IMG/VR virus record: IMGVR_UViG_3300007513_000001
Span: 1-64,000 of that record
Length of the DNA stretch: 64,000 nucleotides
Direction: 5' to 3' (one strand)
Part shown: piece by piece, positions 7,336-44,386 of the stretch
Position numbering within the stretch: position 1 is the stretch's first letter
Layout of the letters: every line of letters begins with the position of its first letter
Program-made: the position numbers and the translations under genes
Notes under the pieces: model-generated
What the model saw: only the letters and a program-made list of their open reading frames with translations
The model's database searches: none
What the model was told of the DNA's origin: nothing

Positions 7336-7365
7336 TGTAAAAAAAGCACCCCAATGTGTTATAAT
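7336..7365 (+). promoter_or_regulatory. early-type promoter TGTAAA-N18-TATAAT
   Basis: Matches the 10-copy motif. Confidence 0.75.
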
Positions 7366-7386
7366 AAGACAGTAAAGGAAGGATTG

Positions 7387-7599
7387 ATGGAAACTCAACT
7401 TACAACTTCTGGATCTCAACTTAGCAAACTTACTCCATTTGAAGAAGCTGCTTTGAGAGCGTTTCATTTCGGGCTTGCGTTAGATAATTGCGTACAGCTT
7501 CAAGCTTATATCGACACTAGTGAAGCCAGCTCTTCGAAAGAATCAACTTGGCTAGACAAAGTGTACATTGCTGAAATTATGGATTCTGAATTTAATTAA
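7387..7599 (+). CDS. hypothetical protein
   Basis: GGAAGG RBS downstream of the promoter. Confidence 0.6.
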   Translation: METQLTTSGSQLSKLTPFEEAALRAFHFGLALDNCVQLQAYIDTSEASSSKESTWLDKVYIAEIMDSEFN

Positions 7600-7606
7600 A
7601 TTTTTT

Positions 7607-7692
7607 GGCTGAGTGGTGGAATCGGTATACACAGGAGACTTAAAATCTCCCGGCCACAGGCCTTGCGGGTTCGAGTCCCGCCTCAGCTACCA
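7607..7692 (+). tRNA. tRNA-Leu(TAA)
   Basis: Cloverleaf, GGAGA-CTTAAAA-TCTCC anticodon arm, long variable arm, GTTCGA, CCA. Confidence 0.95.
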
Positions 7693-8128
7693 TTTCTTGG
7701 ATCATCAAGAATATACTGCGTTGTAGAATATAGTGCGCAGTATTTTAAGTTAAGCTAAGTGAACGAGAGATGAATCCTCTTTAGTAACAACTCTATTACA
7801 ATCTTTGAAATTTTATATTGAGGCCTTGGATTTAGCGGTCCGAGGAGCCGGTGGGGATACCGGTCGTAGTGACCAAAAAACTGACGGTGAGCGACGCATT
7901 GGTGGTCGCAAGAAGTCCGCAGGGAATGAGAGGTATGTACACCAACTGCATACTTCGTACCGTACGACGGATCCCCACCCCCTCTACCTTTTATGTGGGA
8001 GACACAGGCCAGAGTAGATGGTGGGTAAGTCTTACGAGCAGTAAGCCATCTCGTGGTTGCGTAAGCGTGGTCGAAGTACTGACTTTACAGGCTGTGTCTA
8101 GATAGAGAAGCTGGGAACTCTATCATAC
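7693..8128 (+). ncRNA. putative large structured ncRNA between tRNAs
   Basis: Nested helices e.g. 7850-7858/7971-7979, 8000-8007/8092-8099, 8016-8021/8046-8051, 8101-8107/8118-8124. Confidence 0.6.
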
Positions 8129-8204
8129 GGGACCGTAGCTCAGTTGGCAGAGCACCGGCCTTTTAAGCCGAGAGTCGTGGGTTCGAGCCCCACCGGTCCC
8201 ACCA
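8129..8204 (+). tRNA. tRNA-Lys(TTT)
   Basis: Cloverleaf, CTTTTAA loop, GTTCGA, CCA. Confidence 0.93.
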
Positions 8205-8211
8205 TTTTTTT

Positions 8212-8287
8212 GCCGAGATAGCTCAGCTGGCAGAGCTTCTGATTTGTAATCAGATGGTCGCAGGTTCGACTCCTGTTCTCGGCTCCA
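8212..8287 (+). tRNA. tRNA-Thr(TGT)
   Basis: Cloverleaf, TCTGA-TTTGTAA-TCAGA, GTTCGA, CCA. Confidence 0.95.
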
Positions 8288-8317
8288 TTTAAATTTTATT
8301 CTCGTATATGTATTTTT

Positions 8318-8572
8318 ATGCAGTACGAGTTTTCTTATTACAAATGTCCACTTTGCAAAGGATCGATTAATTGGTCTTTGAATAGCTCGGTTCCGGGAGC
8401 TTCATCACAAGCGTGGTGTTCAAACAGTCTTACATCTTCTAGAGCTAATTGGGATCGAAAATTATCTAAAGTTTGTTTTTGGAAAGGTAAAGTAGAAAGA
8501 AAGAAAAATGGAGAAGTACGATTATTAGACGCTAGCGGCCGTCTTCTAAATCCAGTTTTGTACAAGAAATAA
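8318..8572 (+). CDS. small Cys-containing hypothetical protein
   Basis: CPLC plus two further Cys. Confidence 0.5.
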   Translation: MQYEFSYYKCPLCKGSINWSLNSSVPGASSQAWCSNSLTSSRANWDRKLSKVCFWKGKVERKKNGEVRLLDASGRLLNPVLYKK

Positions 8573-8592
8573 ATTTGAAATAAAATATAGAT

Positions 8593-9792
8593 ATGAAAAT
8601 TAAATCTATTATTTTAGGATTAGCTTTAGCAGGAAATGCATCAGCCCAAGAGCTTAGTTCTAGTGAAACATCTTATACCGGTGCGACTATTTTAGAGGGA
8701 GACTGGGATGTAACTTTCCAGGAAAGCGTTGCAATTGCTGACAGTGATGATACGTTTCCATATGCTTTCTTTGAAGGCAACACGCTCTATGTTGGTAATT
8801 CCGATATTTATGAGAATACAGTTGATGCCATCGTGGAGTTTTTCTGGTTCCAATCTTCGATTGATAGAGGTACAGATTTTTATGTTGCCGTCATCAAGAC
8901 ACGCGCCACTCCAGGACACGACTGTTACTATGCGCCCTGGGATTGGGCACGTGGAGCACAGTGCAAACTTTGGGCAGATGAGTGGTCAGATTGGGGTGAG
9001 TATCCGGTTCTAAGCGTCGAAGCTATGACTGACGTAGAGCGCGAGCAAGGCGCTTTTCGATGGGACTGGTCAGTACCATTTGAAAGTTATGGTATTGATG
9101 CTTATGGGCAAGTAACATTTCAAAGCATATATGGAATTGGTTCTACTTCTGAGGGTGCTGCCATGGCTCATGGCGAATACCAAATGAACGAAGATGGTGA
9201 AATGAAAGCCGAAGGAAGCGTGCAAGTAAAAGGATATCACTCCTCAGAATACAGTGTACAAACCCAATACGAAGTGACACTATATGAATGGGATGTTTTT
9301 GTAGACGGAAGAGCTGATTTGATGGCTTGGGATATGTATCTTAACCTTGGAGCTAGAGAAACGCAATCTGCTTATCACGAATATTTTTTAGCGGTGCAAG
9401 TAGAATCAGGCCAACCATTCACTATAGATCAATTTAACTTTATAAGTAATTTTGATACTGGTTGGTATGATCCATTTCGACACGAGCTTGGAATTTCATT
9501 AGAGGGGATGACAATTAGCCAGCCTTATTATGAGCCAGTGGCTGATACAGAAGATCCGGATTCTAATGAAGAAGATACGGGATCCTCCGCGGGATATCAA
9601 GACACCGGAGTAGAGCAAAACTCTGACAAAGATACGGCATCATCGTTTGAGTTCGGAGATAGCTCGCAAGAGCCGGGGAGCAAATCATCTAGTGGGTGTT
9701 CTTGTTCTACCAGCTCAACTAATAGAGCTGGTCTCTTATTTGGATTATTAGCTTTATTTTCTCGTAGAAAAGAAAATCATGTCGGGGCGTAG
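8593..9792 (+). CDS. secreted/surface protein with MYXO-CTERM-like C-terminal sorting signal
   Basis: Signal peptide; acidic linker; GCSCS...[13 protein letters not shown] tail. Confidence 0.7.
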
Positions 9793-9859
9793 CGCAGTCT
9801 GGCAGCGCATCTGCTTTGGGAGCAGAGGGTCGTAGGTTCGAATCCTGCCGCCCCGACCA
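9783..9859 (+). tRNA. tRNA-Pro(TGG)
   Basis: CGGGGCG/CGCCCCG acceptor, TCTGC-TTTGGGA-GCAGA, CCA. Confidence 0.95.
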
Positions 9860-9889
9860 CTTATAAAATTAAAGTTCGCAGCTATAACC

Positions 9890-10615
9890 ATGTTGATTTC
9901 TCCTAACCATAAATTTATCTTTTTTAAACCAATGAAATGCGCTGGTTCTTCAGTGGAGTTTGCGCTTTATCAGAATTGTGGTGAAGAAGCTTTGTGCACT
10001 GGTGGAATCGATGATGAAACAGACCGCGGCTTTGTTCAACGAAATAACGTTTTTTATGAAGGCGAAGAATTAAAATATAGATTTCATTCACACACCTGGC
10101 CAGCTTTATTTTATGAAAGAATTGCTGATCAGTCTATTTGGGAAGAATATAAGAAAATTACTATAGTAAGAAACCCATGGGACATGCTAGTGTCTTATTA
10201 TTGGCACTTTAGACATCAACGCGCAAACTGTAATCAATGGCTAGATATAAAAGAAGATGATTCTCCCGACCAGATAAAGTGGAAGTTCGAAAGTTTTTTG
10301 ACATTATTATCTAAAATGGACAGCATATTTCCAGGAGCAGTATACACTAATGATTCGCCAATAAATTACGCATCAACAATAAGCGAAGCCTTTATAGATG
10401 ATAATATAGATTTTTATTTATCGTTTGAAAACATTCAAGAAGACTATATCGAGCTTTGTGATAAACTCTCTATTCCAACTACAAAATTGCCACGATTCAA
10501 AACGCGATATAGAAAAATAGAGATGTCCTACAAAAACTATTACAACAAAACAACTCAAGAAGCAGTATACATGAGATTTCCTAAAACAATAGAAAAGTTC
10601 GGTTATAAGTTCTAA
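9890..10615 (+). CDS. sulfotransferase family 2 protein
   Basis: FIFFKPMKCAGSS and TIVRNPWDMLVSYY PAPS-binding motifs. Confidence 0.8.
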   Translation: MLISPNHKFIFFKPMKCAGSSVEFALYQNCGEEALCTGGIDDETDRGFVQRNNVFYEGEELKYRFHSHTWPALFYERIADQSIWEEYKKITIVRNPWDMLVSYYWHFRHQRANCNQWLDIKEDDSPDQIKWKFESFLTLLSKMDSIFPGAVYTNDSPINYASTISEAFIDDNIDFYLSFENIQEDYIELCDKLSIPTTKLPRFKTRYRKIEMSYKNYYNKTTQEAVYMRFPKTIEKFGYKF

Positions 10616-10631
10616 CGTTATACTTATTTTT

Positions 10632-10814
10632 GTGGAATCCATAGAAGAGTGTATAGAATTATCAATAGTTTCAATGTTGGCAGGAGCATTGTTTTCTCTT
10701 TTTTTTATGAAAAAATGTTTAGTGCCTGAAGATGTAAATTTGTTTTTATTACATGAGCAACTTTCTTATGAAGAATTAAATCTAGAAGATTTAAAATCAG
10801 AATCAGTTGATTAA
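10632..10814 (+). CDS. small membrane protein
   Basis: ORF with hydrophobic segment. Confidence 0.4.
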   Translation: MESIEECIELSIVSMLAGALFSLFFMKKCLVPEDVNLFLLHEQLSYEELNLEDLKSESVD

Positions 10815-10834
10815 ATTTAATCAATGGAGGCCAA

Positions 10835-11182
10835 ATGGGAGAATTAGTAGATTTAGAAGAATATCGTCTTAAAAAAGAAGCTGAAGAAAAAATTAAAACT
10901 GAAGAAGAAATTGAGCTCTTGCGCGAAGAACTCGAAGAAATAATGGCACGCCTCAGTCTTTCTCCGAATCTTGATTCTTGTCCAGTTTATCCAGAAGATT
11001 ATTACAGTTCAATATCTTCTGAAGGTTTTTACTTTTCTACAGTTTGGCCTCCGTATAGCGAATATCGAAAAGATATTCAAGATGAAGAAGATTTATACAG
11101 TCTTGCTTGGACGCCGGATATTCCTAAGTGGTGCATAGATTTGAAAATTTACGATGAGGAACACACCCCGCGTGAAGATTAA
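10835..11182 (+). CDS. hypothetical protein
   Basis: GGAGG RBS. Confidence 0.6.
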   Translation: MGELVDLEEYRLKKEAEEKIKTEEEIELLREELEEIMARLSLSPNLDSCPVYPEDYYSSISSEGFYFSTVWPPYSEYRKDIQDEEDLYSLAWTPDIPKWCIDLKIYDEEHTPRED

Positions 11183-11372
11183 ATTTATTAAACTCTAGTT
11201 TGGATTCGACCCACCTACTTTTTAAAAGAGAGAAAACAATGAAAAAAAATATATTCTTTCAGGCCGGAGGCCGTTCGACCCACCTGGTTTTTAATTTAAG
11301 CGATGTGATAGTCGTAAACCACGATGGTGGTTTCCTCCATCCCACGGCTCCGTCAACACAGGGGGCCCAGAT

Positions 11373-11711
11373 ATGACCCGTATTATACCGATAATAGTGG
11401 TATTATGTTCCATAGGTTGTGCCAAGCACCGAACAACTCAGGCCCTAGAGATGCATCCTTCCGCGTGGTGGCAGTCTACTGGATCGCCATGTACCGATGC
11501 GTTACAGATTAATACTGTCGCCGAGGGATGCAGCACAGTGAACACTTCAATAATCAATAACACGTGGCTCGAGCTTCGATGCGAAGACGAAATAGAGGGT
11601 CCATGGTCTCAATCATGGTGGCTCTTCACCCCCGCCGGAATCGAACCCCTGCCGGGGTATACGCCAGTATGCGTCGATCCGTCTGGAACGCTAAGTATTC
11701 GTGACCAATAA
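11373..11711 (+). CDS. putative lipoprotein
   Basis: Signal ending SIGC; Cys-rich mature part. Confidence 0.55.
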   Translation: MTRIIPIIVVLCSIGCAKHRTTQALEMHPSAWWQSTGSPCTDALQINTVAEGCSTVNTSIINNTWLELRCEDEIEGPWSQSWWLFTPAGIEPLPGYTPVCVDPSGTLSIRDQ

Positions 11712-11768
11712 TAATTTTTTTTAGAGATCTGTGACGGATCATGCGCTGGGTGCATATGTAATTAATGA

Positions 11769-11990
11769 GTGTACCCAATGCGCCCCTCTCTCCGTCCTCA
11801 TGTCTCGATTCCCCTGCTCCTCGCCAGTGCTGCGCTGGCGGGGTGCTTCGGAAAAAATCAACGCGTGGAAGATCCCGCCTCGCTCGTTCACGAGCGATAC
11901 AGCGTAGAATTCCTCGAAGATGATGAATTCGAATTAGACGACCTGCCAGAAGCAGGCGACACCGGAGCTGAGGGAGAGGACATCGAGTAG
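11769..11990 (+). CDS. putative small lipoprotein
   Basis: LAGC lipobox; acidic tail with DTG. Confidence 0.55.
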   Translation: MYPMRPSLRPHVSIPLLLASAALAGCFGKNQRVEDPASLVHERYSVEFLEDDEFELDDLPEAGDTGAEGEDIE

Positions 11991-11993
11991 ATT

Positions 11994-12629
11994 ATGCGCC
12001 AGTGCGTTCGCTGGATATGCATGTCCGCGATAGCGCTGCTATGCATGGCAAATGGACCGGTCCCTGCGCCCATGATTTACGACGCTGAAGATCTAGTGTC
12101 GATGCACCCAGATACTCAAGAGGCGATCCGGTTTCGTAGGCGGCCAATTTTATCTGCGTGGTGGGCCGAAACACCCGCGGTGCGGGTGTGCGCATCGAGT
12201 GGAGTCTCTGAAGCCAGGATGAATCGCGCCCTGGATTATTGGCGCCGGCTTGGATATAATCTAGATCGAGTGTGGTACGACGATGGATCGGCGCTCTGCA
12301 CTGGACCAGGCGTGAGCGGCGAAATTACGATTGCGATCGTCAACTCGGACGTGCCGGTTGGGAACAACCTGGCCGTGACGCAGAATTTCCACAACCGGCA
12401 TACGCATGAGATGATTCGAGCAAGAATCTGGGTCTTTCCTGCGACTGTCGGAAAAGAATTACTGCTTGAGCACGAGCTGGGGCATGCCCTGGGGTGGGCC
12501 CACTATAACAGGTACTTACACGTTATGAATGCCGACTATGCTGAGATTGGACACGACTCCACCGGGCTTCGGTCAAGAGAGTACCAGGCTGAAAAACAGC
12601 GGATTCAAGAGAGTATACGCAAGGATTAA
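11994..12629 (+). CDS. matrixin-like zinc metalloprotease (metzincin)
   Basis: HELGHALGWAH plus Met-turn VMN; signal peptide. Confidence 0.8.
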   Translation: MRQCVRWICMSAIALLCMANGPVPAPMIYDAEDLVSMHPDTQEAIRFRRRPILSAWWAETPAVRVCASSGVSEARMNRALDYWRRLGYNLDRVWYDDGSALCTGPGVSGEITIAIVNSDVPVGNNLAVTQNFHNRHTHEMIRARIWVFPATVGKELLLEHELGHALGWAHYNRYLHVMNADYAEIGHDSTGLRSREYQAEKQRIQESIRKD

Positions 12630-12698
12630 CAGTGACTTGTAAAATTTATGTAACAAAAAAACGTAACAGAGTTGCGCTCAAGCGCCAGTTGGGCCGAA

Positions 12699-13426: not shown

Positions 13427-13456
13427 TGTAAAAAAAGGCCTCAGATTTGGTATAAT
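13427..13456 (+). promoter_or_regulatory. early-type promoter TGTAAA-N18-TATAAT
   Basis: Motif match, TGG extended -10. Confidence 0.8.
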
Positions 13457-13495: not shown

Positions 13496-14344
13496 ATGCC
13501 TCGCAAGTCAGCTAAACTTCGACTCTCTCAAGCTGAAGAGCTCTACAAGAGTTATAGCGATGAGGGAATGACCGAATCCAAAGGTGGTCGCTTCATTCGT
13601 GACATGATTGCTCGTCTCTCTCGAGGCCGTGGTCTCTCTAAGGGACAGCGAAACTGGCTTGATAGCCTCATCGAAGAAGGAGTCCCCCAGCCCAAGGGTG
13701 ACCAGGTGCTGCTCGCCAAAATCGACCAAGCGATTGAAACTCCGGGAATGGAGCGTCGACGCGACATCCTCTCCGATTTCCGTCGGAAGGTGTTCAATGG
13801 TTGGAATCTCTCTCCCAAGCAGACTCAGTGGCTCAGTTCGATGATTGCTGATGCTGAGACTCTCCGAATCGAAGGTCCATGGACTCCGAACGAAGAGCAG
13901 CTCCAAGACATGCGCGATATCGCCGCACTGTCTCGTGGATACAATTCGGTATACTGGTCTACGCATGGCGGCACTTGGCGAGCTGTGGAGAAGATTCGAG
14001 CTTACCTCGAGGTCCTGGATAAAGGAACCCTAGAAGCCCGGGTTGAATTGGCCCCCATTGCACTCGATGAGTGGTGCATCAACAAGGCGAAGAAGGCTAT
14101 GGCTGGCCGGATTCGCGAACTCCGCGAGAAGCCGTACGTTGTTATGGGCGACCTGGTCTGGACCCGGTATCGCGACCCAGGAGCGCTCTGGAATGAACCG
14201 TACCAGTGGTTCCGCGCTCCAGTCTGCGGAAGCCCTGAAATCTCTGAAAAGGGAGAGGTCGTCTATCCGGTGCTCAACCCAGTTCTCGGGCTCATTATGG
14301 TCACAAACCAACAGATTGCCAAGCGCAAGCCGAAAGGAGCATAA
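13496..14344 (+). CDS. hypothetical early protein with two LSxxQ helical modules
   Basis: GGAG RBS after promoter; GC-rich codons. Confidence 0.7.
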   Translation: MPRKSAKLRLSQAEELYKSYSDEGMTESKGGRFIRDMIARLSRGRGLSKGQRNWLDSLIEEGVPQPKGDQVLLAKIDQAIETPGMERRRDILSDFRRKVFNGWNLSPKQTQWLSSMIADAETLRIEGPWTPNEEQLQDMRDIAALSRGYNSVYWSTHGGTWRAVEKIRAYLEVLDKGTLEARVELAPIALDEWCINKAKKAMAGRIRELREKPYVVMGDLVWTRYRDPGALWNEPYQWFRAPVCGSPEISEKGEVVYPVLNPVLGLIMVTNQQIAKRKPKGA

Positions 14345-15958: not shown

Positions 15959-16339
15959 ATGCGAAAGAACGATCTAGTCAAGCTCAACGTTGCAAAGTGT
16001 TTCACGATGAAGTACGGGGGCAAGCGAACTTTCCCGCTCACGAATGGATTTAACGACGAAGAAGGTACTGTCGAGGGTTTCTTCAAGCTGACTCAAGAAG
16101 ACCGGGCTCGACTCCGGGCATCGGGTCGATATGACGGAATCGACAGCGGCGGAGAGTCAAAGCTCGTCCCTAGCGAGGGGCTTGCTAAGCTGAAGAGAGA
16201 TTATGTTTACCAAGTCCTTCGAGCTCGGACCGCTGCGGTTCGCAACTACCGACGCGAGGGTGGTCTTGCCCTGGTTCTCTGCACCAACACTGGACGAAAC
16301 ATTTACATTAAACGCGAACTTTTGGAGGTTGTGAGCTAA
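15959..16339 (+). CDS. SH3-like protein with insertion (MKVGDLV family)
   Basis: MRKNDLVK...LLEVVS; AGGAG RBS. Confidence 0.6.
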   Translation: MRKNDLVKLNVAKCFTMKYGGKRTFPLTNGFNDEEGTVEGFFKLTQEDRARLRASGRYDGIDSGGESKLVPSEGLAKLKRDYVYQVLRARTAAVRNYRREGGLALVLCTNTGRNIYIKRELLEVVS

Positions 16340-19315: not shown

Positions 19316-19318
19316 TTC

Positions 19319-19348
19319 TGTAAAAAACCTTGCGTAATATGGTATAAT
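19319..19348 (+). promoter_or_regulatory. early-type promoter TGTAAA-N18-TATAAT
   Basis: Motif match; identical to the copy at 29569. Confidence 0.8.
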
Positions 19349-19368
19349 ACTACTATAAGGTAAGGAGG

Positions 19369-19644
19369 ATGATTATGGAAATCGTCATTGGCACTAAGGT
19401 TCGTTCTTTTGACTTTCACTACATGCGCGACCTTGAAGGTCCCCGCAGCTGCTACATGGAGGGTATCGTCACCGGAATCGAAAAGATTCGAGGATGCGAT
19501 CGTTACATCATCGCAGTTGACCGCTGCGTATCTGGCGGTAAGGAACTGCCGGCTCAAGAATATCCACCAACCATTATTCCTCCGGTTAATGGAACCCGCA
19601 CTACGATGGGTCGGGTCACAGACGGTGTCGAGGTGATTGCATAA
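19369..19644 (+). CDS. SH3-like hypothetical protein
   Basis: IVIGTKVR...EGIV...VEVI; AGGAGG RBS. Confidence 0.6.
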   Translation: MIMEIVIGTKVRSFDFHYMRDLEGPRSCYMEGIVTGIEKIRGCDRYIIAVDRCVSGGKELPAQEYPPTIIPPVNGTRTTMGRVTDGVEVIA

Positions 19645-24930: not shown

Positions 24931-25098
24931 ATGGAAGAAAAAGAATGGGGATCAATCGAATACCCAATCATTCTAGGCTATACCAAGCCTAATGGTGAGA
25001 AGTATAAAGTGGTAATTCATAACTCAGATCAGTCCGAATATGAATATGATAAGATGTTTGAGTTGTGTGGTGAAGATGTACCATTCAGTGTAGATTAA
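24931..25098 (+). CDS. hypothetical protein
   Basis: AAGGA RBS after promoter. Confidence 0.55.
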   Translation: MEEKEWGSIEYPIILGYTKPNGEKYKVVIHNSDQSEYEYDKMFELCGEDVPFSVD

Positions 25099-29530: not shown

Positions 29531-29568
29531 ACTAAAAGCCCTGTTATTCAAATAAAAATAATTTATTC

Positions 29569-29598
29569 TGTAAAAAACCTTGCGTAATATGGTATAAT
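29569..29598 (+). promoter_or_regulatory. early-type promoter TGTAAA-N18-TATAAT
   Basis: Motif match. Confidence 0.8.
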
Positions 29599-29624
29599 AC
29601 TACTATAAGGTAAGGAAAGAATCA

Positions 29625-29981
29625 ATGGCGCGCAAACGACGCAACGACAGAAATCACGTCATCTACCTCCTCACCGGTCCCACCGGTCAGAGATACGTGG
29701 GAGTTACCTTCGCACGAGGACGAGCTTGGAAACGATCTGCTAAGATTCGATGGGAAGCCCACGTTCGAAATGCTCTCGATTACGATCGTCAAAATCTCTT
29801 GAGCGTTGCAATCCGTGAGCATGGTGCTTCGAACTTCTCACGTGAAGTTTTAGAAATTGTTCGAGGAAAGCAGAACGCTCACAATCGAGAGAGGGAGCTC
29901 CTCCAACTCATCCAACCCGAGCTTAACATGGAAGGGATGGGACGTAAAGTTAACAGCGCACAGCGCGAGGCGGTAGCATGA
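29625..29981 (+). CDS. GIY-YIG domain protein
   Basis: VIYLL...RYVGVT...RWEAH...RE. Confidence 0.7.
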   Translation: MARKRRNDRNHVIYLLTGPTGQRYVGVTFARGRAWKRSAKIRWEAHVRNALDYDRQNLLSVAIREHGASNFSREVLEIVRGKQNAHNRERELLQLIQPELNMEGMGRKVNSAQREAVA

Positions 29982-32343: not shown

Positions 32344-32805
32344 ATGACTCTCACCACTCGCGAACAGGCCCTCCTCACCAACACTGACGTCCTGGGTTAC
32401 ATCCAGGCGGAGAACGCCAAGCGCGACGCGCAGGCGAAGGCTGAGGGCTGGCAGTTCTGGACCCTCATGGCTGAGAGCCTGGCGGATGAGCACGCCAACG
32501 TCTACGAGCTAGAGCACCGGCTTGCGTGGGGAACTTACAGCGACGTGTACAAGGATGCATATTTCATGCGCCCTCACATTGACCTTAGCGACTGGACCCT
32601 TAGCGAAATCGAGGCTAAGATTGAAGAGATTTGTGAAAGCGAAGCTCGTGCTGCAGAGCTAGAAGCTGAATGGCTCGCTGAGCAGAAGCAGATGGAGCGT
32701 GACCAGATCGCGCTTGGCCTGACGGACACAATGTCGTGCGGCGAAGAGGTAGAGCTGGAGGAATGGGAAATCTACGAGGCGAGAGCCGAAGCAATGGGAT
32801 ACTAA
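32344..32805 (+). CDS. hypothetical early protein
   Basis: GGAG RBS; GC-rich codons. Confidence 0.7.
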   Translation: MTLTTREQALLTNTDVLGYIQAENAKRDAQAKAEGWQFWTLMAESLADEHANVYELEHRLAWGTYSDVYKDAYFMRPHIDLSDWTLSEIEAKIEEICESEARAAELEAEWLAEQKQMERDQIALGLTDTMSCGEEVELEEWEIYEARAEAMGY

Positions 32806-38856: not shown

Positions 38857-39035
38857 ATTATAAGGGAACATACAATGGTAGAATTCATGGCAGCAGGAGT
38901 CCTCGTCGGGCTTTGGACAGTCGCTGGAGTTGCAATGGCAAATGCTTTGGTGCGTGGATAAAATGAAAATAATTGATTACGTTGAAGTAATTTCTTTAGT
39001 CGGAGCTGGTTTCGCGATCGGAGAAGTCTGCAGAA

Positions 39036-39677
39036 TTATTTGGTGTCTATAATCGGTAATATCTGAACTGTGTCTTGAACGACTTTTACGCGAGCTCGGC
39101 CTTTTACATCACGGACTTCTTTCACTAGCTCACCAATGGTGGGATAATCTCTAGTGCCCATTGATCTTGCGTCATCGATAATAATTGCATGTACCATCGA
39201 TTCGCCATCTCCAGAAGCTGGAATATTTGATGGGTGTCGAAGAATCATCTGAAGCTCTTGGAAAGCTACACAGTCTCGGTATGGCAGCCGAGTAGTGTCT
39301 CCTTTTGAATAGTGGGCATCTAACCAAAACACGCAAGGACCTTCAAGGGAGTTTAAAAAACTTGGAAGGACATCCAAACTATTTCCACATACCAGCTCGA
39401 CTTCAGCAGGCAGCTTACCCTGGAGTCTTCCAAAACCATTTTGTCTGTCAATTCGAACTCTTGCTACTTCTAAACATTTTTCAGACAACTCTACAGACAT
39501 GATGCGATCAAACTCTCGGATCATCATTTCTACAGTAGCTCCATCGTAAGTACCGGTTTCGATGAATTCTCTAGCTCCGATCATATCGCGGCAAGTCTTT
39601 AAGATTCCTCGCACTTCTTTTCGACGAGTTGTCATCAATTCGGGTCGGCTAAACTTTTCCACACTCTTACTACTCAT
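39036..39677 (-). CDS. class I SAM-dependent methyltransferase-like protein
   Basis: FIETGTYDG; SVEL; GNSLDVL; FWLDAH; IIIDD. Confidence 0.7.
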   Translation of the reverse strand: MSSKSVEKFSRPELMTTRRKEVRGILKTCRDMIGAREFIETGTYDGATVEMMIREFDRIMSVELSEKCLEVARVRIDRQNGFGRLQGKLPAEVELVCGNSLDVLPSFLNSLEGPCVFWLDAHYSKGDTTRLPYRDCVAFQELQMILRHPSNIPASGDGESMVHAIIIDDARSMGTRDYPTIGELVKEVRDVKGRARVKVVQDTVQILPIIDTK

Positions 39678-39764
39678 GTCATATCTCCACTACACTAAAT
39701 ATATTCAGAGACTCAGATCTTGAACGAATTTCAAACCACATTCGAGTGCAACACAAATCTAAAA

Positions 39765-39938
39765 CTATAGAATCCCCACCCACCACCACATCGCCAAGAT
39801 CGTTGTAGAACAGAAGATCAGCTGAAAGAGCAAGTAACTCACAATCGCCTTAGTGTCATCGTGCAACTCTTTAAAGTACGGAGTCGTAGACCACAGCCAA
39901 TCTATCAAGCGGTATAGCGGGTCGTCATGGTACAACAT
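39765..39938 (-). CDS. 57-aa membrane peptide (not in ORF track)
   Basis: MLYHDD...WWWVGIL; ATACTTA just upstream. Confidence 0.45.
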   Translation of the reverse strand: MLYHDDPLYRLIDWLWSTTPYFKELHDDTKAIVSYLLFQLIFCSTTILAMWWWVGIL

Positions 39939-40175
39939 TAACCTATAAGTATCTCATCTCTCGGTCCCTGTTCTCGATTTTTCTTTTTTGCTGGGTTCTT
40001 TTTATCTGTCGGTTCGCGAGTGAGGTCAAAATGTATATGGCAGACGGTGCAGCAGAGGCACAATGCCCAGCCGATCGACGTCCTGGAATCCTATCGTTTC
40101 TTTTTTCAGGGGCAAAACCGAGCAAAATCTAAAAGTACTCTGCCTTAGCCTACCCACGCGTAGGAGTACCCTATC

Positions 40176-40297
40176 TGTAACTGTATTTATTATTCTGCTG
40201 TGTTACTGTAACATATTAATGTATCATTTGTATCATTTAATTAATTGTAACACTGTAACACTATTTGTATCACGTTGTGTAACATATAAATGTATCA
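40176..40297. repeat. AT-rich array of TGTAAC (x5) and TGTATCA (x4)
   Basis: Counted directly; non-coding. Confidence 0.65.
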
Positions 40298-40305
40298 TCA
40301 GCTTC

Positions 40306-40611
40306 GCTGAGATTCAGTTTCACGTGGGCTGGAGTGAATTTTTTTCTATACATCCGACCCGGCAAGTTTAGATTTTAAATAGGAGGTGAAAACTTTGGAA
40401 CACATTCAAGTCGGGCTATTAACAGCCCGTGAGACCCTAGAGGTAAAATACGACGACGCACTGGTGCAGTTGAGTGAAGCACTAAAAGCCGACGATTCTT
40501 CGATGATTAACACATGGGAAGCTTACATTCGCGATATCGAGACACAGATGCGCCACTTGGAAAATATCCCAGCTGAAAGCTGAGATTTAGTTTCGCGTGG
40601 GCTGGAGTGAA
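40306..40611 (+). repeat. 33-bp direct repeats flanking a small ORF
   Basis: 40306-40338 and 40579-40611, 2 mismatches. Confidence 0.8.
40386..40583 (+). CDS. small helical hypothetical protein
   Basis: AGGAGG RBS, GTG start. Confidence 0.65.
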   Translation: MKTLEHIQVGLLTARETLEVKYDDALVQLSEALKADDSSMINTWEAYIRDIETQMRHLENIPAES

Positions 40612-40711
40612 AAATAGTTTATAAACGCTTGAACACCCTATGGTTCGGGTATATTATTCTATCAGGTTGCAGGAAATGCAGCCAATTGCTTTCAAAACAG
40701 GAGAAAAAAGC

Positions 40712-40951
40712 ATGCCATACTCTAACACTAAGTCCACCAAGCGCTTCAGCTTCGGTATCAGCCGCAACGACACCAGCCACAAGGCCGGCGCAAACAGTCT
40801 CACCATCGCCACTCTTCCTTACGAGGACAGCCAGTACAGCGTTGGCCAGACCCAGCTCCGCATGACGGTCCGTGAAGCACGCGCTCTTCAGAGCTTCCTC
40901 AACACTGAGCTAGCTAGCGTAGATATTTCGGATGACTCCGGCGTTATCTAG
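40712..40951 (+). CDS. hypothetical early protein
   Basis: AGGAG RBS; TTGAAC-N17-TATTAT upstream; GC-rich codons. Confidence 0.65.
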   Translation: MPYSNTKSTKRFSFGISRNDTSHKAGANSLTIATLPYEDSQYSVGQTQLRMTVREARALQSFLNTELASVDISDDSGVI

Positions 40952-40974
40952 TCCTGGTGGATTAGATTAGAAAT

Positions 40975-41020
40975 GAAGCCGGGTTGACAGGGGTTGGCCC
41001 GGTTTCTTTTTTGTTTTTTT
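40975..41020 (+). terminator. intrinsic terminator
   Basis: GAAGCCGGGTT/GGCCCGGTTTC stem plus long T run. Confidence 0.8.
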
Positions 41021-41029
41021 TGCGCAATC

Positions 41030-41059
41030 TGTAAAAAAAGGCCTCAGATTTGGTATAAT
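41030..41059 (+). promoter_or_regulatory. early-type promoter TGTAAA-N18-TATAAT
   Basis: Motif match; 36 bp identical to the 13425 copy. Confidence 0.8.
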
Positions 41060-41108
41060 ACTACTATAAGGACAGCAAATTAATCAACTCCCGCCCGGAG
41101 AAAAACAT

Positions 41109-41846
41109 ATGGCCCGTCGCCCGAAACTCATTACACTTGAAGCGGTTTCCGACACTACGCACAAAGATCACAAGCGACACACTGAGCACTTGATGATCGA
41201 CTTGCTCCGCAAATATCCACGCGGCGCAAATTGTAAGCTTACTCTAAGCGATTATCGTAGTCACTACTCTGGACATCCGCGGCTCGTCGACGAAGAAGTC
41301 CGTAATCACGGAAGCCACGAAGAAAACTGTGGCTATAATGATTTGCTTATCTATCGCTGGTGCTGCGCACTGAATATCGACGCTAGTGAATGGGATTGGC
41401 GACATGTCGTCCGGAAGTACTGGCCCGAACTTGGAAAGAACGGTGTTACTCGTCGGTCACGGCGACTCTCCGCACGGACTGAGGGAGCGTATCGTCGAAT
41501 TATGCGGGCAGGACGCCCCGGTATTTACAGCGTCAACTTCGGTCATGGATACAACTCTCGCAACAACGAGATGAAGGTCTACGCTGAAAATTCTGATATG
41601 GCGGTGATGACTGCTAAGATTAATCTTGGCGCCACCTTCGAAAACAAGGACGAAGCCAACGCAACCTTCGAACGTGAGGGTTGCCCTTCCGAGCTGATGG
41701 GATTGAACCACAGCCGCTGCGCGCAATTTGAACGGGCAGCCGCTCAGAAGAAAACGCAGATCGAATCACTCAAAAGAGAAATCGAACTGTTGGAGCTCCG
41801 ATCAGTTATGCTTAAGACTTACTCTATCGCAGCGGTGGCAGGATGA
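41109..41846 (+). CDS. hypothetical early protein
   Basis: GGAG RBS after promoter. Confidence 0.7.
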   Translation: MARRPKLITLEAVSDTTHKDHKRHTEHLMIDLLRKYPRGANCKLTLSDYRSHYSGHPRLVDEEVRNHGSHEENCGYNDLLIYRWCCALNIDASEWDWRHVVRKYWPELGKNGVTRRSRRLSARTEGAYRRIMRAGRPGIYSVNFGHGYNSRNNEMKVYAENSDMAVMTAKINLGATFENKDEANATFEREGCPSELMGLNHSRCAQFERAAAQKKTQIESLKREIELLELRSVMLKTYSIAAVAG

Positions 41847-42142
41847 GCGTTGAACTCTGTAAAACTCTAGCATCGACTATGTCTGATAGCGATCTTGCGC
41901 GAGGCTGGCGTATTCTTTACGAAGAGCACAAGAAGCGTGAGGAAGGAATCGCTATTAAGAACAAATATGCTCTCATTAGCGGCATGCGCGTTGAATGGCT
42001 TGGTCGTGGTGGAATCGTCATGACTGGTACTATCGATAGAGTTAAGCGAAAGAAAGCGCTTGTCTGGGCAGACCTCAATGGTCGACCCGATAAATCACAA
42101 CGGTGGGATATTCCGCTAGGTATGCTTACAAAGATTTCCTAA
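41843..42142 (+). CDS. hypothetical protein (SH3-like C-terminal part)
   Basis: SGMRVEW...GTIDRV...LTKI. Confidence 0.6.
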   Translation: MSVELCKTLASTMSDSDLARGWRILYEEHKKREEGIAIKNKYALISGMRVEWLGRGGIVMTGTIDRVKRKKALVWADLNGRPDKSQRWDIPLGMLTKIS

Positions 42143-42294
42143 GGAGGGAAAATGAGCAAGAAGACGTCATCCGTTCACTATAACGAAAATGTTAAGAATG
42201 CGACAATTGAATTGTTTCTAGCCGGCAGGTCGCACGATCAGATTGAGAGCGCTATCAGGAAGATGATCCGGGCCCACAAGACGCGTGGAGGTAA

Positions 42295-42483
42295 GTGATG
42301 TACATTTACAAGATTATTATTACGTACAGCGGCGGTGGAGTAAAGACTGAATGGCTTTGCCCCAATAAGGGAGAATCGCTGTCAGACTGCGAAACTCGGA
42401 TGAAGGGATATATTGACGATCTCGAAGCCAATGTTGATATCGTGCACGTAAAGTGTACACGGCGAACGATGCCAGGAATTTAA
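42295..42483 (+). CDS. hypothetical protein
   Basis: GGAGG RBS. Confidence 0.5.
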   Translation: MMYIYKIIITYSGGGVKTEWLCPNKGESLSDCETRMKGYIDDLEANVDIVHVKCTRRTMPGI

Positions 42484-42511
42484 AAAAAAAGATAAAAAAA
42501 GATGGGAGTTC

Positions 42512-42541
42512 TGTAAAAAATCCACCTATTTATGGTATAAT
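42512..42541 (+). promoter_or_regulatory. early-type promoter TGTAAA-N18-TATAAT
   Basis: Motif match. Confidence 0.8.
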
Positions 42542-42614
42542 ATTACTATAAGGTGGAAGGAACAAGGAACCCCACTTTTCAATCTCAAACCCCCAACTCC
42601 CCGGAGTCTCTCAC

Positions 42615-43694
42615 ATGGACATCAAAACTTTCAACTCCATCGCCCCCAATCTTCCTGCAGAGATCGCCATCCTGATGCGCGGTCCCACCGGAGTTGGTAA
42701 GTCCCATGTCGCCCGAGGTCTGGCTAAGAAGCTCGAACTCCCCTATATCGACGTCCGCGGTTCGACCATGGATGAGTCGGATATGGGTATCCCTGATATG
42801 GCGAAGTCTGCTGAGGTAGGCGCTTACACCAAGATGGTTCCCACCTGGTACCTCCGGGCTTGCCAAGAGCCGGTTGTCCTCATGCTGGACGAATTGAACC
42901 GCTCGATGCCGCAGGTTATGCAGAGCTTCTTCCAGATCGTTCTGGACCGTGAGCTTGGTAACCTCGCAGACGGTGAGGCACTCCGCCTTCACCCCGAAAC
43001 CCGCGTTATCGCGGCTGTCAACTGGGGCGCTGAGTACGATGTAAACGATATGGATCCCGCACTCCTCCGTCGGTTCTTCGTTGCTGACCTTGCTCCTTCT
43101 GCTGAAGATTGGATTGAGTGGGCTTCGACCGAAGGCTTGGATGAGATTCTGATCGACTTCATCCGTCAGAACTCTGCCCACTGGCGAGTTGATCCTTCGG
43201 CTGTCGAGCCGGGAACGGTTACTCCGACTCCCGCATCCTGGCACCGTCTGGATACTTCTCTCTCCCACATGGGTTGGGGACCTTCGAAGTTCGCTGGTAA
43301 GGACACCCCTGCCGGTTTCTACGGTACCCTGCTCGGCTTCGTTGGAGTCGAGGCTGCCATCGCCTTCAAGGGCTTCATCAAGGATTACGAGCGGCAGATC
43401 TCTGCAGAGGACATCGTCGAAGGACGCATTCACCCCTCTGAGTTCATGGACCTCCCTGCTGGTACGAAGAACTCGGTAATCGATAAGGTTTCCGACCACT
43501 GCAAGAACAACGAGTGGAGCATGGAGCAGGCTGATAACGTTGCTGCCTTTGGTAAGAACATCGGCGGTGAGAACACCGTTCAGCTCTGGAACAAGATTTC
43601 CAGCTCTAACAACCTCCCCAACATTCAGAAGCTCCACAAGCTGATGGGTGCCGAGGTGGTGCAGATCGTCCAAGCTTCTCGCAACCTTAAGTAA
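42615..43694 (+). CDS. MoxR-like AAA+ ATPase
   Basis: GPTGVGKS; MLDELNR; VIAAVN; DPALLRRF. Confidence 0.9.
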   Translation: MDIKTFNSIAPNLPAEIAILMRGPTGVGKSHVARGLAKKLELPYIDVRGSTMDESDMGIPDMAKSAEVGAYTKMVPTWYLRACQEPVVLMLDELNRSMPQVMQSFFQIVLDRELGNLADGEALRLHPETRVIAAVNWGAEYDVNDMDPALLRRFFVADLAPSAEDWIEWASTEGLDEILIDFIRQNSAHWRVDPSAVEPGTVTPTPASWHRLDTSLSHMGWGPSKFAGKDTPAGFYGTLLGFVGVEAAIAFKGFIKDYERQISAEDIVEGRIHPSEFMDLPAGTKNSVIDKVSDHCKNNEWSMEQADNVAAFGKNIGGENTVQLWNKISSSNNLPNIQKLHKLMGAEVVQIVQASRNLK

Positions 43695-43950
43695 TCCCAA
43701 CTGGGGAGAACACTGTTCGCGCTGTTAACACAGCCGTCTGGAGCCGAAGGGCTAGGTTCTCCCCAAAACCAATCAACGGAGTCCCACATGGTTTGGACAG
43801 CAATTTGTGCAAATGAACTAGTATTGTCTTTTAACACTTCGGCCAACTGCATTCGTGAAGCTACAGATCACGCTCGCGAAGAAGCCAGGATGGCTGGATC
43901 TTGGCTGATCTGCCTCGTCAAGGGAAAGGTTGAAAATAACGTATATTTCG

Positions 43951-43980
43951 TTTAAACATCGTCTATATCATTACTATAAT
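43951..43980 (+). promoter_or_regulatory. variant promoter TTTAAA-N18-TATAAT
   Basis: Same 18-bp spacing, one mismatch. Confidence 0.5.
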
Positions 43981-44143
43981 AGTATTATCGATTTCGCCGA
44001 GGGATAGGGGAGAAAAACTGCCGCGCCGAACATTATGAGAGACATGAGACGGGGAGCGCTGAGTAGTGATAATCGCTCGCTGGGACCAACACATTAACGA
44101 TTCTCTTCTCTATCCCTCGGCCTTTTCTTTAATGGAAACAAAC

Positions 44144-44338
44144 ATGAACATCGATCCTAATTTTGTCCCGCAAGAACAAACCCTCCGTGAGAGGGAATCC
44201 ATGTACAGGGCAGTTAACTACAAGTATACTAAGCTCGATTACGCCAAGGATGCACTCGCAGCACTGTTTCTTACAAGCGCAGTTATCACTATGGTGTACT
44301 TCGCGTTTGCTCTAGACGCAATTTTTGCCAGTATGTAA
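44144..44338 (+). CDS. small membrane protein
   Basis: C-terminal TM helix. Confidence 0.5.
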   Translation: MNIDPNFVPQEQTLRERESMYRAVNYKYTKLDYAKDALAALFLTSAVITMVYFAFALDAIFASM

Positions 44339-44356
44339 AAAAATAATTGTTGATTC

Positions 44357-44386
44357 TGTAAAATTTCACCCTATTTATGGTATAAT
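44357..44386 (+). promoter_or_regulatory. early-type promoter TGTAAA-N18-TATAAT
   Basis: Motif match. Confidence 0.8.

What the first reader, a model, noticed from the sequence alone, without database searches (positions are those of the whole stretch)
7336..44386. Ten-copy promoter with a non-canonical upstream box: TGTAAA-N18-TATAAT
Seen: TGTAAA starts at 7336, 13427, 15901, 19319, 24877, 29569, 32269, 41030, 42512 and 44357, always exactly 18 bp before TATAAT. Nine copies have TGG as the extended -10, nine are preceded by TC, and most are followed by a TACTATAAG-like segment and a strong RBS. A TTTAAA variant lies at 43951. Inference: strong early promoters read by the host primary sigma with altered -35 preference, or by a phage activator (compare the T4 MotA box).
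Basis: partly seen in the sequence, partly recalled or inferred. Interest (0 to 1): 0.66.

Follow-up and report, generated by a model that had tools for sequence, protein, structure and literature searches.

The report
Phage promoters with a private -35 box
The ten repeats are real promoters of an uncultured marine giant phage, and their odd upstream box TGTAAA most likely matches a sigma factor that the phage family carries in two pieces, with an altered DNA-reading helix encoded as a separate small gene.

Summary
TGTAAA-N18-TATAAT occurs 10 times in the window, all on the + strand, against 0.01 expected. The whole 293-kb genome, an IMG/VR marine jumbo myovirus, has 14 copies. All lie in one arc of about 93 kb, each 18-73 nt before a start codon. 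A 65-83% identical relative keeps box and -10 at 94% identity while the spacers keep 50%.

Relatives carry the same kind of box, TG(T/C/A)AA, at N16. There were 157 matches against 14 controls in 26 related contigs, and no excess in five unrelated large phages. No canonical TTGACA-N17-TATAAT was found in the three family genomes scanned for it (G000, G004, G005).

The genome has no RNA polymerase gene that I could detect. It does encode an RpoD-like sigma ending after region 4.1 (aligns to E. coli sigma70 344-567). An 83-aa protein encoded 180 kb away carries region 4.2 (sigma70 569-601). Its recognition helix is invariant and differs from sigma70 at two positions, E585 to M and R588 to C.

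Best reading (confidence 0.5): these are early-type promoters whose -35 substitute is read by this detached phage region 4.2, with the host sigma able to fire them first through the extended -10. No transcript data exist. This is a new variant of split sigma factors.

The parts
7336..7365 (+). Promoter copy 1 (TGT instead of TGG before the -10; no ATAAGG). It drives a 71-aa ORF (7384-7599) and then tRNA-Leu, tRNA-Lys and tRNA-Thr.
   Evidence: matrix score 41.0 bits
13427..13456 (+). Promoter copy 2, before ORF 13496-14344 (282 aa, no family). Its spacer is identical to that of copy 8.
   Evidence: 43.0 bits
15901..15930 (+). Promoter copy 3, before ORF 15959-16339 (126 aa).
   Evidence: 45.6 bits
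19319..19348 (+). Promoter copy 4, before ORF 19369-19644 (91 aa). The cassette is identical to copy 6 over about 50 nt.
   Evidence: 47.2 bits
24877..24906 (+). Promoter copy 5, before ORF 24931-25098 (55 aa).
   Evidence: 41.1 bits
29569..29598 (+). Promoter copy 6, before ORF 29625-29981 (118 aa, weak GIY-YIG match).
   Evidence: 47.2 bits
32269..32298 (+). Promoter copy 7 (TT instead of TC before the box), before ORF 32344-32805 (153 aa).
   Evidence: 41.7 bits
40975..41006 (+). Terminator-like hairpin (14 pairs plus a T run) just upstream of copy 8. It is the only clear hairpin before any of the 14 copies.
   Evidence: fold z = -4.3
41030..41059 (+). Promoter copy 8, before ORF 41109-41846 (245 aa). 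The orthologue in G001 is at 2935: box and -10 are kept, the spacer is replaced.
42512..42541 (+). Promoter copy 9, with a 73-nt leader before the MoxR-like AAA+ ATPase gene 42615-43694. The orthologue in G001 is at 4401.
44357..44386 (+). Promoter copy 10, before the DUF2201 metallopeptidase/VWA gene 44413-45831. The orthologue in G001 is at 6055.
43951..43980 (+). TTTAAA-N18-TATAAT look-alike. It is not a member of the class: matrix score under 12 bits, and the stretch does not align with G001.
7607..9859 (+). Cluster of four tRNA genes (Leu-taa, Lys-ttt, Thr-tgt, Pro-tgg) downstream of copy 1.

Best explanation
The repeats are the early-type (pre-replicative) promoters of an uncultured marine jumbo myovirus that depends on the host's core RNA polymerase. 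TGGTATAAT is an ordinary sigma70-type extended -10. Transcription is predicted to start at the A of the conserved ATAAGG, 6-7 nt downstream. The upstream box TGTAAA is the -35 substitute of a whole phage family (TG-T/C/A-AA). I infer that it is read not by the host sigma's region 4 but by a phage protein. The family's RpoD-like sigma ('sigmaN', G000 256.7-257.5 kb) stops after region 4.1. Region 4.2 is supplied by a separate 83-aa protein ('sigmaC', G000 75193-75444, minus strand), which has a four-cysteine N-terminal module and an altered, invariant recognition helix. On infection the host holoenzyme can open these promoters through the extended -10 alone, and this makes sigmaN and sigmaC. 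Together on host core they would then read box plus -10, giving a positive loop and a promoter code private to the phage. Shown here: the motif, its placement, its conservation, its spread through the family, and the split of the sigma sequence. Inferred: that transcription starts there, that sigmaN and sigmaC bind each other and the core enzyme, and that sigmaC reads the box.
For: Motif: 10 sites against 0.01 expected. The genome holds 14, all on the + strand, with only N18 enriched, and they form a discrete class by matrix score. Each is followed by an ORF start within 18-73 nt.

Footprint against G001: box 68/72, extended -10 62/66, spacer 33/66 identical positions.

Family: an unbiased scan of words and spacings gives TGTAA, TGCAA or GTGTA as the top upstream word in G000, G003, G004 and G005. 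TGYAA-N17-TATAAT gives 157 matches against 14 controls in 26 related contigs (2.54 Mb), mostly on one strand per contig. Five non-family large phages give 10 against 6 in 1.35 Mb. A 59% G+C relative has GTGAAA-N17-TAGACT. TTGACA-N17-TATAAT is absent from G000, G004 and G005.

Polymerase: no match to PF00562, PF00623 or PF00940.

Sigma: sigmaN has regions 1.2, 2 and 3 and aligns to sigma70 344-567. It matches only positions 1-18 of Pfam Sigma70_r4. SigmaC matches positions 19-49 at 39 bits, above the cut-off, and aligns to sigma70 569-601.

SigmaC is present in all six more complete relatives holding sigmaN. SigmaN is present in 6 of 8 long contigs holding sigmaC. The helix T-R-M-R-I-C-Q-I-E-K is invariant in 33 sequences.

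Promoters of this class precede the sigmaN operon, and box-like promoters precede sigmaC.
Against: There is no transcript data. All 13 public runs holding this DNA are DNA runs, so no start site is shown.

No test of sigmaN-sigmaC binding was possible. The one complex job went to the other candidate, ORF2, and gave only weak support.

The sigma genes themselves sit behind this promoter class, so the host holoenzyme must be able to use it at least weakly. That also fits host-only reading.

G000 and G001 place the box 2 bp further from the -10 than all relatives, and this is unexplained.

Six of eight further long contigs with sigmaC show no excess of the exact pattern. Only one of them was examined, and it has a variant form.

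The host is unknown, so its own -35 preference could not be checked.
Confidence: 0.5

Rival explanations
1. Host primary sigma alone reads these promoters. They would be extended -10 promoters, and TGTAAA(AAA) would be a weak -35 or an A-tract that tunes binding or escape. The phage sigma pieces would serve other promoters.
For: TGGTATAAT is a perfect extended -10, which needs no -35 (stated in PMC2988021). In the TTGACA register the relatives' box sits at the canonical 17-bp spacing with T, G and A kept. The sigma genes lie behind the same promoter class, so the host enzyme must use it. T4-type phages also show lineage-specific -35 variants such as TTTACW (PMC4122927).
Against: A weak -35 would not be kept at 68/72 positions between relatives while the spacers drift. 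Nor would it stay the same across genomes of 23-59% G+C. In G000 the box is at N19 in the TTGACA register, outside the usual range. No other -35/-10 pair is over-represented for the phage sigma to read. Many promoters of G005 lack TGn and so would depend on the box.
Confidence: 0.25
2. A different phage protein reads the box as an activator, in the manner of MotA. ORF2, the 92-aa HTH protein encoded next to sigmaN, is the prime candidate. It would work with the host sigma70 or with sigmaN.
For: ORF2 is conserved next to sigmaN in 45 of the 46 contigs examined, in all three relative reading frames, and also in distant relatives. Part of its helix, M-N-H-x-x-x-R-N, is nearly invariant. The model has four helices at pLDDT 79. 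Weak fold matches are dominated by LuxR/GerE/NarL HTH domains and include one sigma region 4 (Z 3.2-4.3). Five of 42 members touch Sigma70_r4_2 at best E 0.02. The complex with the sigmaN C-terminus scored 0.47 against a best control of 0.00; this is 'weak support', and by the tool's calibration such passes are more often wrong than right unless likely beforehand; runs agree in at least 76% of contacts; partner pLDDT at least 63.
Against: No significant sequence or Foldseek match to any DNA-binding family. SigmaC is a bona fide region 4.2 and fits exactly where sigmaN ends, so it is the simpler reader. No MotA or AsiA homologue was found.
Confidence: 0.15
3. The conservation mainly reflects mobile promoter cassettes, like the PeSL elements of T4-type phages. 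These would spread by duplication and recombination among small accessory genes rather than being selected for a special reader.
For: Copies 19319 and 29569 are identical over about 50 nt. Copies 13427 and 41030 share their spacer. All copies lie in the arm of small ORFs. PeSLs combine an AT-rich stretch, a promoter, an SD and a start codon (PMC4122927).
Against: Only one of 14 copies has the upstream stem-loop that defines a PeSL. Orthologous copies keep the boxes while replacing the spacer. The box is shared by relatives with no nucleotide similarity. This explanation is compatible with the main one; it does not replace it.
Confidence: 0.05
4. The repeats are not promoters. They would be some other repeated signal, for example replication, packaging or regulatory protein sites.
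For: No RNA evidence is available.
Against: The repeats have a perfect -10 with TGn, a fixed spacing and one orientation matching the genes. They lie 18-73 nt before SD plus start codon, and in one case directly after a terminator.
Confidence: 0.03

Closest known systems
T4 early promoters (Pe) and PeSL cassettes of T4-type phages
   Same: Many near-identical strong promoters in the arm of small early genes. They have an AT-rich upstream stretch, TGn plus TATAAT, conserved positions beyond the classical elements, a lineage-specific -35 variant, and an SD plus start codon close behind (PMC2988021; PMC4122927). The capsid protein of this phage is gp23-like.
   Different: The T4 elements are read by the host sigma70 and keep a recognisable TTGACA-like -35 (TTTACW, TTGYVH). 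Here the box is TGTAAA at N18. The stem-loop is missing in 13 of 14 copies. The phage has its own RpoD-like sigma. No gp55, gp33, gp45, MotA or AsiA was detected.
Two-subunit (split) sigma factors: T4 gp55/gp33, SPO1 gp34/gp33, B. subtilis SigO-RsoA, Tn916 Sig7-Sig8
   Same: Sigma function is divided over two polypeptides of a mobile element or phage. The cognate promoter sits upstream of the element's own sigma genes, giving positive feedback (bioRxiv 10.64898/2026.10.01.756105).
   Different: Those systems divide region 2 from region 4 (or a region 4 substitute) and are small alternative sigmas. Here a group-1-like sigma with regions 1.2 to 4.1 is cut inside region 4. The 4.2 piece carries an extra four-cysteine module. 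The two genes lie about 180 kb apart on opposite strands. Binding and function are untested.
T4 middle promoters and sigma appropriation (AsiA plus MotA)
   Same: The host-type -10 is kept and the -35 is replaced by a phage-specific box read by a phage protein.
   Different: The MotA box is (a/t)(a/t)TGCTT(t/c)a centred at -30 (PMC2988021). MotA has a double-wing fold, not an HTH. No MotA or AsiA homologue is present. Here the proposed reader is a true sigma region 4.2.
Other phage-encoded sigma70-family factors (cyanophage, Bacillus phage and Vibrio phage sigmas)
   Same: A sigma70-family protein encoded by a large phage. The best GenBank phage matches have 27-40% identity.
   Different: The one other phage sigma whose C-terminus I inspected, in contig L062, is a single chain with region 4.2. 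The ORF2 partner has no homologue in 50,697 GenBank phage records. SigmaC was not searched against GenBank phages.

Membership tests
sigma70-type promoter (-35/-10 class) | -10 hexamer close to TATAAT | tested here: met
   TATAAT in 14 of 14 copies
sigma70-type promoter (-35/-10 class) | -35 hexamer close to TTGACA, 17 +/- 1 bp upstream | tested here: not met
   TGTAAA matches 3 of 6 at N18, or CTGTAA at N19 in the TTGACA register. The consensus scan does not list any of the sites. There is no TTGACA-N17-TATAAT in the genome.
sigma70-type promoter (extended -10 class) | TGn immediately upstream of the -10 | tested here: met
   TGG in 13 of 14 copies and TGT in one
sigma70-type promoter (any class) | Transcription starts 6-8 nt downstream of the -10 | not testable with these tools
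   All 13 runs that hold the DNA are DNA runs and none is RNA
T4 middle promoter (MotA-dependent) | MotA box TGCTT centred at -30, 11-13 bp from the -10 | tested here: not met
   The box is TGTAAAAAA and ends 15 bp before the -10. The definition is taken from PMC2988021.
T4 middle promoter (MotA-dependent) | MotA and AsiA encoded by the phage | tested here: not met
   tblastn with T4 MotA and AsiA gives a best E of 9.9 and no hit. Distant homologues could be missed.
PeSL (promoter-early stem-loop) cassette | Stem-loop directly upstream of the promoter | tested here: not met
   Only copy 41030 has a clear hairpin (z = -4.3). The other 13 show no clear terminator-like hairpin (three more reach z -1.8 to -3.5 without one).
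PeSL (promoter-early stem-loop) cassette | Repeated promoter plus SD plus start cassette between small variable ORFs | tested here: met
Split (two-subunit) sigma factor | Two polypeptides that together supply the -10 and -35 reading parts | tested here: met
   At sequence level, sigmaN aligns to sigma70 344-567 and sigmaC to sigma70 569-601. They match Pfam Sigma70_r4 positions 1-18 and 19-49 respectively.
Split (two-subunit) sigma factor | Both pieces bind each other or RNA polymerase, and both are needed for transcription | not testable with these tools
Split (two-subunit) sigma factor | Both genes occur together in the same genomes | tested here: met
   SigmaC is in G001, G003, G004, G005, G031 and G032:C5. 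SigmaN is in 6 of 8 long contigs with sigmaC, and the two without it are 60-70% complete.
Sigma70 region 4.2 (Pfam PF04545) | Profile match above the curated cut-off | tested here: met
   For sigmaC: 39 bits against a cut-off of 24.1, and all 120 listed homologue clusters carry PF04545. For ORF2: not met, with no match at E of 0.01 or better.

The most novel reading that the evidence does not exclude
A widespread family of uncultured marine large phages (246 or more IMG/VR contigs carry sigmaC) takes over host core RNA polymerase with a primary-type sigma factor that is naturally cut inside region 4. The -35 reading helix is a free-standing zinc-finger-like protein with changed specificity. 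The phage's early promoters (TGnAAA, 16-18 bp, TATAAT) therefore form an orthogonal code that host sigma reads poorly and host promoters do not match. A third conserved HTH protein, ORF2, may be part of the same machine.
Probability: 0.4. Interest if true: 0.85.

Novelty: new variant of a known kind. Interest (0 to 1): 0.72.

Why it matters
If the reading is right, this is a natural case of a housekeeping-type sigma split between regions 4.1 and 4.2, paired with a matching non-canonical -35 element. It would show a third way for a phage to escape the host's -35 code, besides sigma appropriation in T4 and small alternative sigmas.

It offers a directly testable pair: an invariant helix T-R-M-R-I-C-Q and the box TG-n-AA. 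That pair bears on how region 4.2 residues 585 and 588 set -35 specificity.

It could also supply an orthogonal promoter and sigma set for synthetic biology.

The motif gives a practical rule for annotating early transcription units in a large group of uncultured marine phages. The family is abundant: the DNA was found in 7 marine studies, and sigmaC has 161 protein clusters.

Tried and rejected
1. Nucleotide search of GenBank phages gave no match. The phage is uncultured, and its nearest named relatives share only 31-36% helicase identity.

2. I looked for RNA data to map starts. Only DNA runs hold this sequence.

3. I looked for a phage RNA polymerase, which would have suggested a phiKZ-like scheme. 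PF00562, PF00623 and PF00940 gave nothing. The PF00940 control was silent, so that one test is void.

4. My first idea was that ORF2 is the missing region 4.2. No Pfam or PDB sequence match was found, Foldseek gave nothing, and only weak matches by fold alignment (VIA-align) and by Pfam scan of the family members appeared. Complex prediction of the sigmaN C-terminus with ORF2 scored 0.47 against a best control of 0.00, verdict 'weak support'. The mark was reached by 58 of 80 solved complexes and 2 of 110 mismatches, but a pass at 0.60 or under is weak. Runs agree in at least 76% of contacts and partner pLDDT is at least 63. The idea was dropped as the main one once the true region 4.2 was found.

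5. A split intein joining sigmaN and sigmaC was considered because of the invariant Asn-Cys in sigmaC. It was rejected: sigmaN has only about 25 residues after region 4.1, far too few for an N-intein, and sigmaC has its own SD and start codon.

6. Host inference failed. ORF2 homologues lie in genome bins labelled as five different groups, four of them different phyla or families and one only 'uncultured bacterium'; these are presumably mis-binned phage contigs.

7. I tested for covariation between ORF2 residue S/A and box T/C. It is not clean.

8. T4 gp55, gp45, gp44, gp62, gp43, gp33, MotA and AsiA were sought by tblastn. None was found.

9. I checked for a PeSL-type stem-loop. It is present at one copy only.

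10. The exact pattern is not enriched in 6 of 8 further long contigs with sigmaC. One of them, G037, has the variant GTGAAA-N17-TAGACT. The other five were not examined.

11. The sigmaC structure model was of low confidence (pLDDT 64), so it was not used for a fold search.


Full report
**1. The observation**

TGTAAA-N18-TATAAT occurs ten times in the window, at exactly the stated positions and all on the + strand. Dinucleotide-preserving shuffles give 0.01.

The aligned copies share more than the two hexamers. The consensus is an AT-rich stretch, then (T)TC-TGTAAAAAA, about 10 variable bases, (T)ATGG-TATAAT-A, 4-5 bases, then (T)ATAAGG, followed by an AAGGA-type ribosome site. A start codon follows 18-73 nt after the -10.

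The TTTAAA site at 43951 exists, but I do not count it as a member. It scores under 12 bits with a matrix built from the family. The real copies score 28.7-47 bits and the next best site in the genome scores 15.4. The stretch around it also does not align with the closest relative.

**2. The genome**

The window is the first 64 kb of a 293,409-bp IMG/VR virus record with 39.4% G+C. The 'terminal repeat' is only a 38-bp end overlap.

Nearly all genes are on the + strand. The record encodes a portal, a gp23-like major capsid protein, two tail-sheath paralogues, a DNA polymerase and a helicase. It also has eight tRNAs. This makes it a jumbo myovirus whose structural module belongs to the T4 superfamily.

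No GenBank phage is close: there is no nucleotide match, and helicase identity is at most 36%. The DNA is found in marine and seawater metagenomes of 7 studies, and only in DNA runs.

Genome-wide there are 14 copies of the motif, all on the + strand. They lie at 7-45 kb and 245-281 kb, which is one arc of about 93 kb across the arbitrary origin. The arc is rich in small ORFs. The structural and replication block from 46 to 245 kb has none. Only spacing 18 is enriched, and TTGACA-N17-TATAAT does not occur at all.

**3. Conservation**

A pattern scan of IMG/VR found a syntenic relative, G001, at 65-83% nucleotide identity. It has seven copies.

In the six orthologous pairs the identical positions are:
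- box: 68 of 72
- extended -10: 62 of 66
- start region: 49 of 66
- spacer: 33 of 66
- the 80 nt upstream: 51-70% by global alignment

At 41030 the spacer was wholly replaced while both boxes stayed. This is a clear footprint of selection on the box, the -10 and the start region.

Within G000 some cassettes are identical over about 50 nt (19319 and 29569), and 13427 and 41030 share their spacer. Cassette duplication has therefore also occurred.

**4. The polymerase question**

No multisubunit or T7-type RNA polymerase domain was found. The control for the T7-type model was silent, so that one test is void.

One sigma70-family gene lies right behind copy 256405. I call it sigmaN. It has regions 1.2, 2 and 3 and aligns to E. 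coli sigma70 residues 344-567. The -10 reading motif FSTYA-WW-Q is kept. The protein ends about 25 residues after R-L-R-F-G-I, that is, after region 4.1. There is no region 4.2.

The same truncated form is seen in 45 related IMG/VR contigs at 38-83% identity. It is always followed by a conserved gene of about 90 aa, ORF2, in any of the three relative frames. These are therefore two genes and not a sequencing error.

**5. The missing piece**

I first took ORF2 for the missing region 4.2, but the support is weak. There is no sequence match and no Foldseek match. The wider fold search gave only Z 3.2-4.3 matches, dominated by LuxR/GerE-type HTH domains. Five of 42 members touch Sigma70_r4_2 at best E 0.02. 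The complex prediction with the sigmaN C-terminus scored 0.47 against a best control of 0.00, verdict 'weak support'.

Searching the genome with Pfam Sigma70_r4 settled the matter. SigmaN matches profile positions 1-18 only. An 83-aa ORF on the minus strand at 75193-75444, which I call sigmaC, matches positions 19-49 at 39 bits, above the curated cut-off.

The sigmaC profile aligns to E. coli sigma70 residues 569-601. It begins exactly where sigmaN stops.

SigmaC has an N-terminal module with four invariant cysteines, followed by the region 4.2 helix-turn-helix.

Co-occurrence of the two pieces:
- SigmaC is present in every more complete relative that holds sigmaN: G001, G003, G004, G005, G031 and the 305-kb contig G032:C5.
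- SigmaN, and ORF2, are present in 6 of 8 further long contigs that hold sigmaC.

SigmaC forms 161 protein clusters of 73-112 aa in marine data sets. None has a meaningful name. At least 246 IMG/VR contigs encode it.

Its recognition helix T-R-M-R-I-C-Q-I-E-K is invariant in 33 sequences of 39-100% identity. Against sigma70 T-R-E-R-I-R-Q-I-E, this keeps R584, R586 and Q589 and changes E585 to M and R588 to C; the numbering follows the alignment. That these residues lie on the helix that contacts the -35 bases is textbook knowledge (Campbell et al. 2002; Gardella et al. 1989; Siegele et al. 1989), recalled here and not tested.

**6. The box is a family trait**

An unbiased scan of all 5-mers at all spacings upstream of TATAAT gave these top words:

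| Genome | Top upstream word | Observed | Expected |
|---|---|---|---|
| G000 | TGTAA, at N18 | 14 | 0.3 |
| G003 | TGCAA, at N16 | 16 | 0.6 |
| G004 | TTGTA / TGTAA, at N16 | 12 | 0.8 |
| G005 | GTGTA, at N16 | 35 | 0.4 |

Over 26 related contigs (2.54 Mb, 23-57% G+C), TGYAA-N17-TATAAT occurs 157 times against 14 for the reversed control. The matches lie almost always on one strand per contig.

Five large phages without the split sigma give 10 against 6 in 1.35 Mb.

A distant relative, G037 (340 kb, 59% G+C), has GTGAAA-N17-TAGACT. The box survives even where the -10 has changed.

In relatives the start region (ATAAGG or ATAA) is shared too.

Promoters of this class stand before the sigmaN operon in many relatives. 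Box-like promoters stand before sigmaC.

**7. Mechanism**

What is shown: a discrete, conserved, gene-proximal promoter-like class with a perfect extended -10. A non-canonical box shared by a whole phage family, whatever its base composition. No canonical -35/-10 promoters. And a phage sigma whose sequence is divided into two genes at the border of regions 4.1 and 4.2, the second with an invariant altered recognition helix.

What is inferred: sigmaN and sigmaC assemble on the host core enzyme. SigmaN would read TATAAT and sigmaC the box. The host holoenzyme would fire the promoters first through TGGTATAAT, because the sigma genes sit behind the same class. This would give a positive loop like that described for Tn916 Sig7-8.

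I put this at 0.5. Host sigma alone gets 0.25 and ORF2 or another activator 0.15. A cassette-spread explanation is compatible with the main reading rather than a rival.

Unexplained points:
- G000 and G001 place the box 2 bp further out than all relatives.
- ORF2 has no assigned role.
- Five further long contigs with sigmaC show no excess of the exact pattern and were not examined.

**8. Comparison with known systems**

The promoters work like T4 early promoters. Those are strong UP/-35/TGn/-10 elements with extra conserved positions (PMC2988021). The arrangement resembles PeSL cassettes (PMC4122927), but 13 of 14 copies lack the stem-loop.

They are not MotA-type. The box is wrong in sequence and position, and no MotA or AsiA was found. 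T4 late factors gp55, gp33 and gp45 were not found either.

Split sigma factors are known: T4 gp55/gp33, SPO1 gp34/gp33, SigO-RsoA and Tn916 Sig7-8. All of them separate region 2 from region 4. I found no report of a group-1-like sigma cut inside region 4 with the 4.2 piece on a cysteine-rich carrier. Literature searches for split or two-subunit sigmas returned only the systems named above. That is an absence in the library held, not proof.

I therefore rate this a new variant of a known kind.

**9. Verdict**

The finding gains interest because it leads to a testable pairing of a private -35 box with a detached region 4.2 in an abundant, uncultured group of marine phages. No step had to be referred.

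Noticed in passing
L143:115-1287 (G000 73834-75006, outside the window): A 390-aa ORF with a tubulin/FtsZ-type glycine motif (GGGTGSG-like) lies next to sigmaC. It may be a phage tubulin of the PhuZ/TubZ kind. A PIN plus PhoH-like ATPase gene (L143 1800-3089) is always divergent from sigmaC in relatives.
   Followed up: no
L001:48-1052 (G000 254782-256401, outside the window): A GroEL-like chaperonin gene lies immediately upstream of promoter copy 256405 and the sigmaN operon.
   Followed up: no
L001:2149-2424 (G000 257498-257773): ORF2 is a 92-aa four-helix protein with a nearly invariant M-N-H-x-x-x-R-N helix. It is encoded next to sigmaN in all relatives but one (L062, which has an ordinary fused sigma), including distant ones. 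Its role is unknown, and it has no homologue in GenBank phages.
   Followed up: partly
window 54839; also G000 132710, 156956, 168603, 183838, 192327, 216907 and 282920: The motif ATATTTAT lies 31-49 nt before the start codons of several structural genes, including portal, sheath and large virion proteins. It is a candidate late promoter element whose reader is unknown.
   Followed up: partly
window 19316-19370 and 29566-29620; window 13427-13456 and 41030-41059: The promoter cassettes are identical over about 50 nt (first pair) or share the whole spacer (second pair). This indicates recent duplication or recombination between copies.
   Followed up: partly
G000 221613 (L068:1613), outside the window: The next-best matrix hit (15.4 bits), GTGAAAAA then TGATATAAT, sits 29 nt before the DNA polymerase gene. 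It carries the box variant that dominates in the 59% G+C relative G037.
   Followed up: partly
L244:13316-20000 and L245:1-3202 (G037 133316-143202): In the distant relative G037 the -10 (TAGACT) is followed by ATG after only 6 nt, so these genes look leaderless.
   Followed up: no
window 42615-45831: A MoxR-like AAA+ ATPase and a DUF2201 metallopeptidase/VWA protein form a pair. Each has its own promoter copy, and the pair is conserved in G001.
   Followed up: no
L066:3880-10235 (G000 183880-190235): Two tandem tail-sheath paralogues of about 1050 aa each.
   Followed up: no
window 7607-9859 and L070:14609-19563: Eight tRNA genes lie in two clusters, both inside the promoter-bearing arc. A 923-aa protein with a tRNA nucleotidyltransferase domain is encoded at G000 286576-289347.
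   Followed up: no
window 58618-61701 (minus strand): Three minus-strand genes, two with tail-fibre-like matches, interrupt the otherwise + strand genome at the border between the promoter arc and the helicase gene.
   Followed up: no
L113 (NHDW01000006.1, 305,838 bp): A contig filed in a public bin as 'Methylococcaceae bacterium TMED69' carries ORF2, sigmaC and the promoter pattern. It is most likely a mis-binned jumbo phage genome of this family. Similar cases lie in bins labelled Bdellovibrionota, Planctomycetia and Flavobacteriales.
   Followed up: partly
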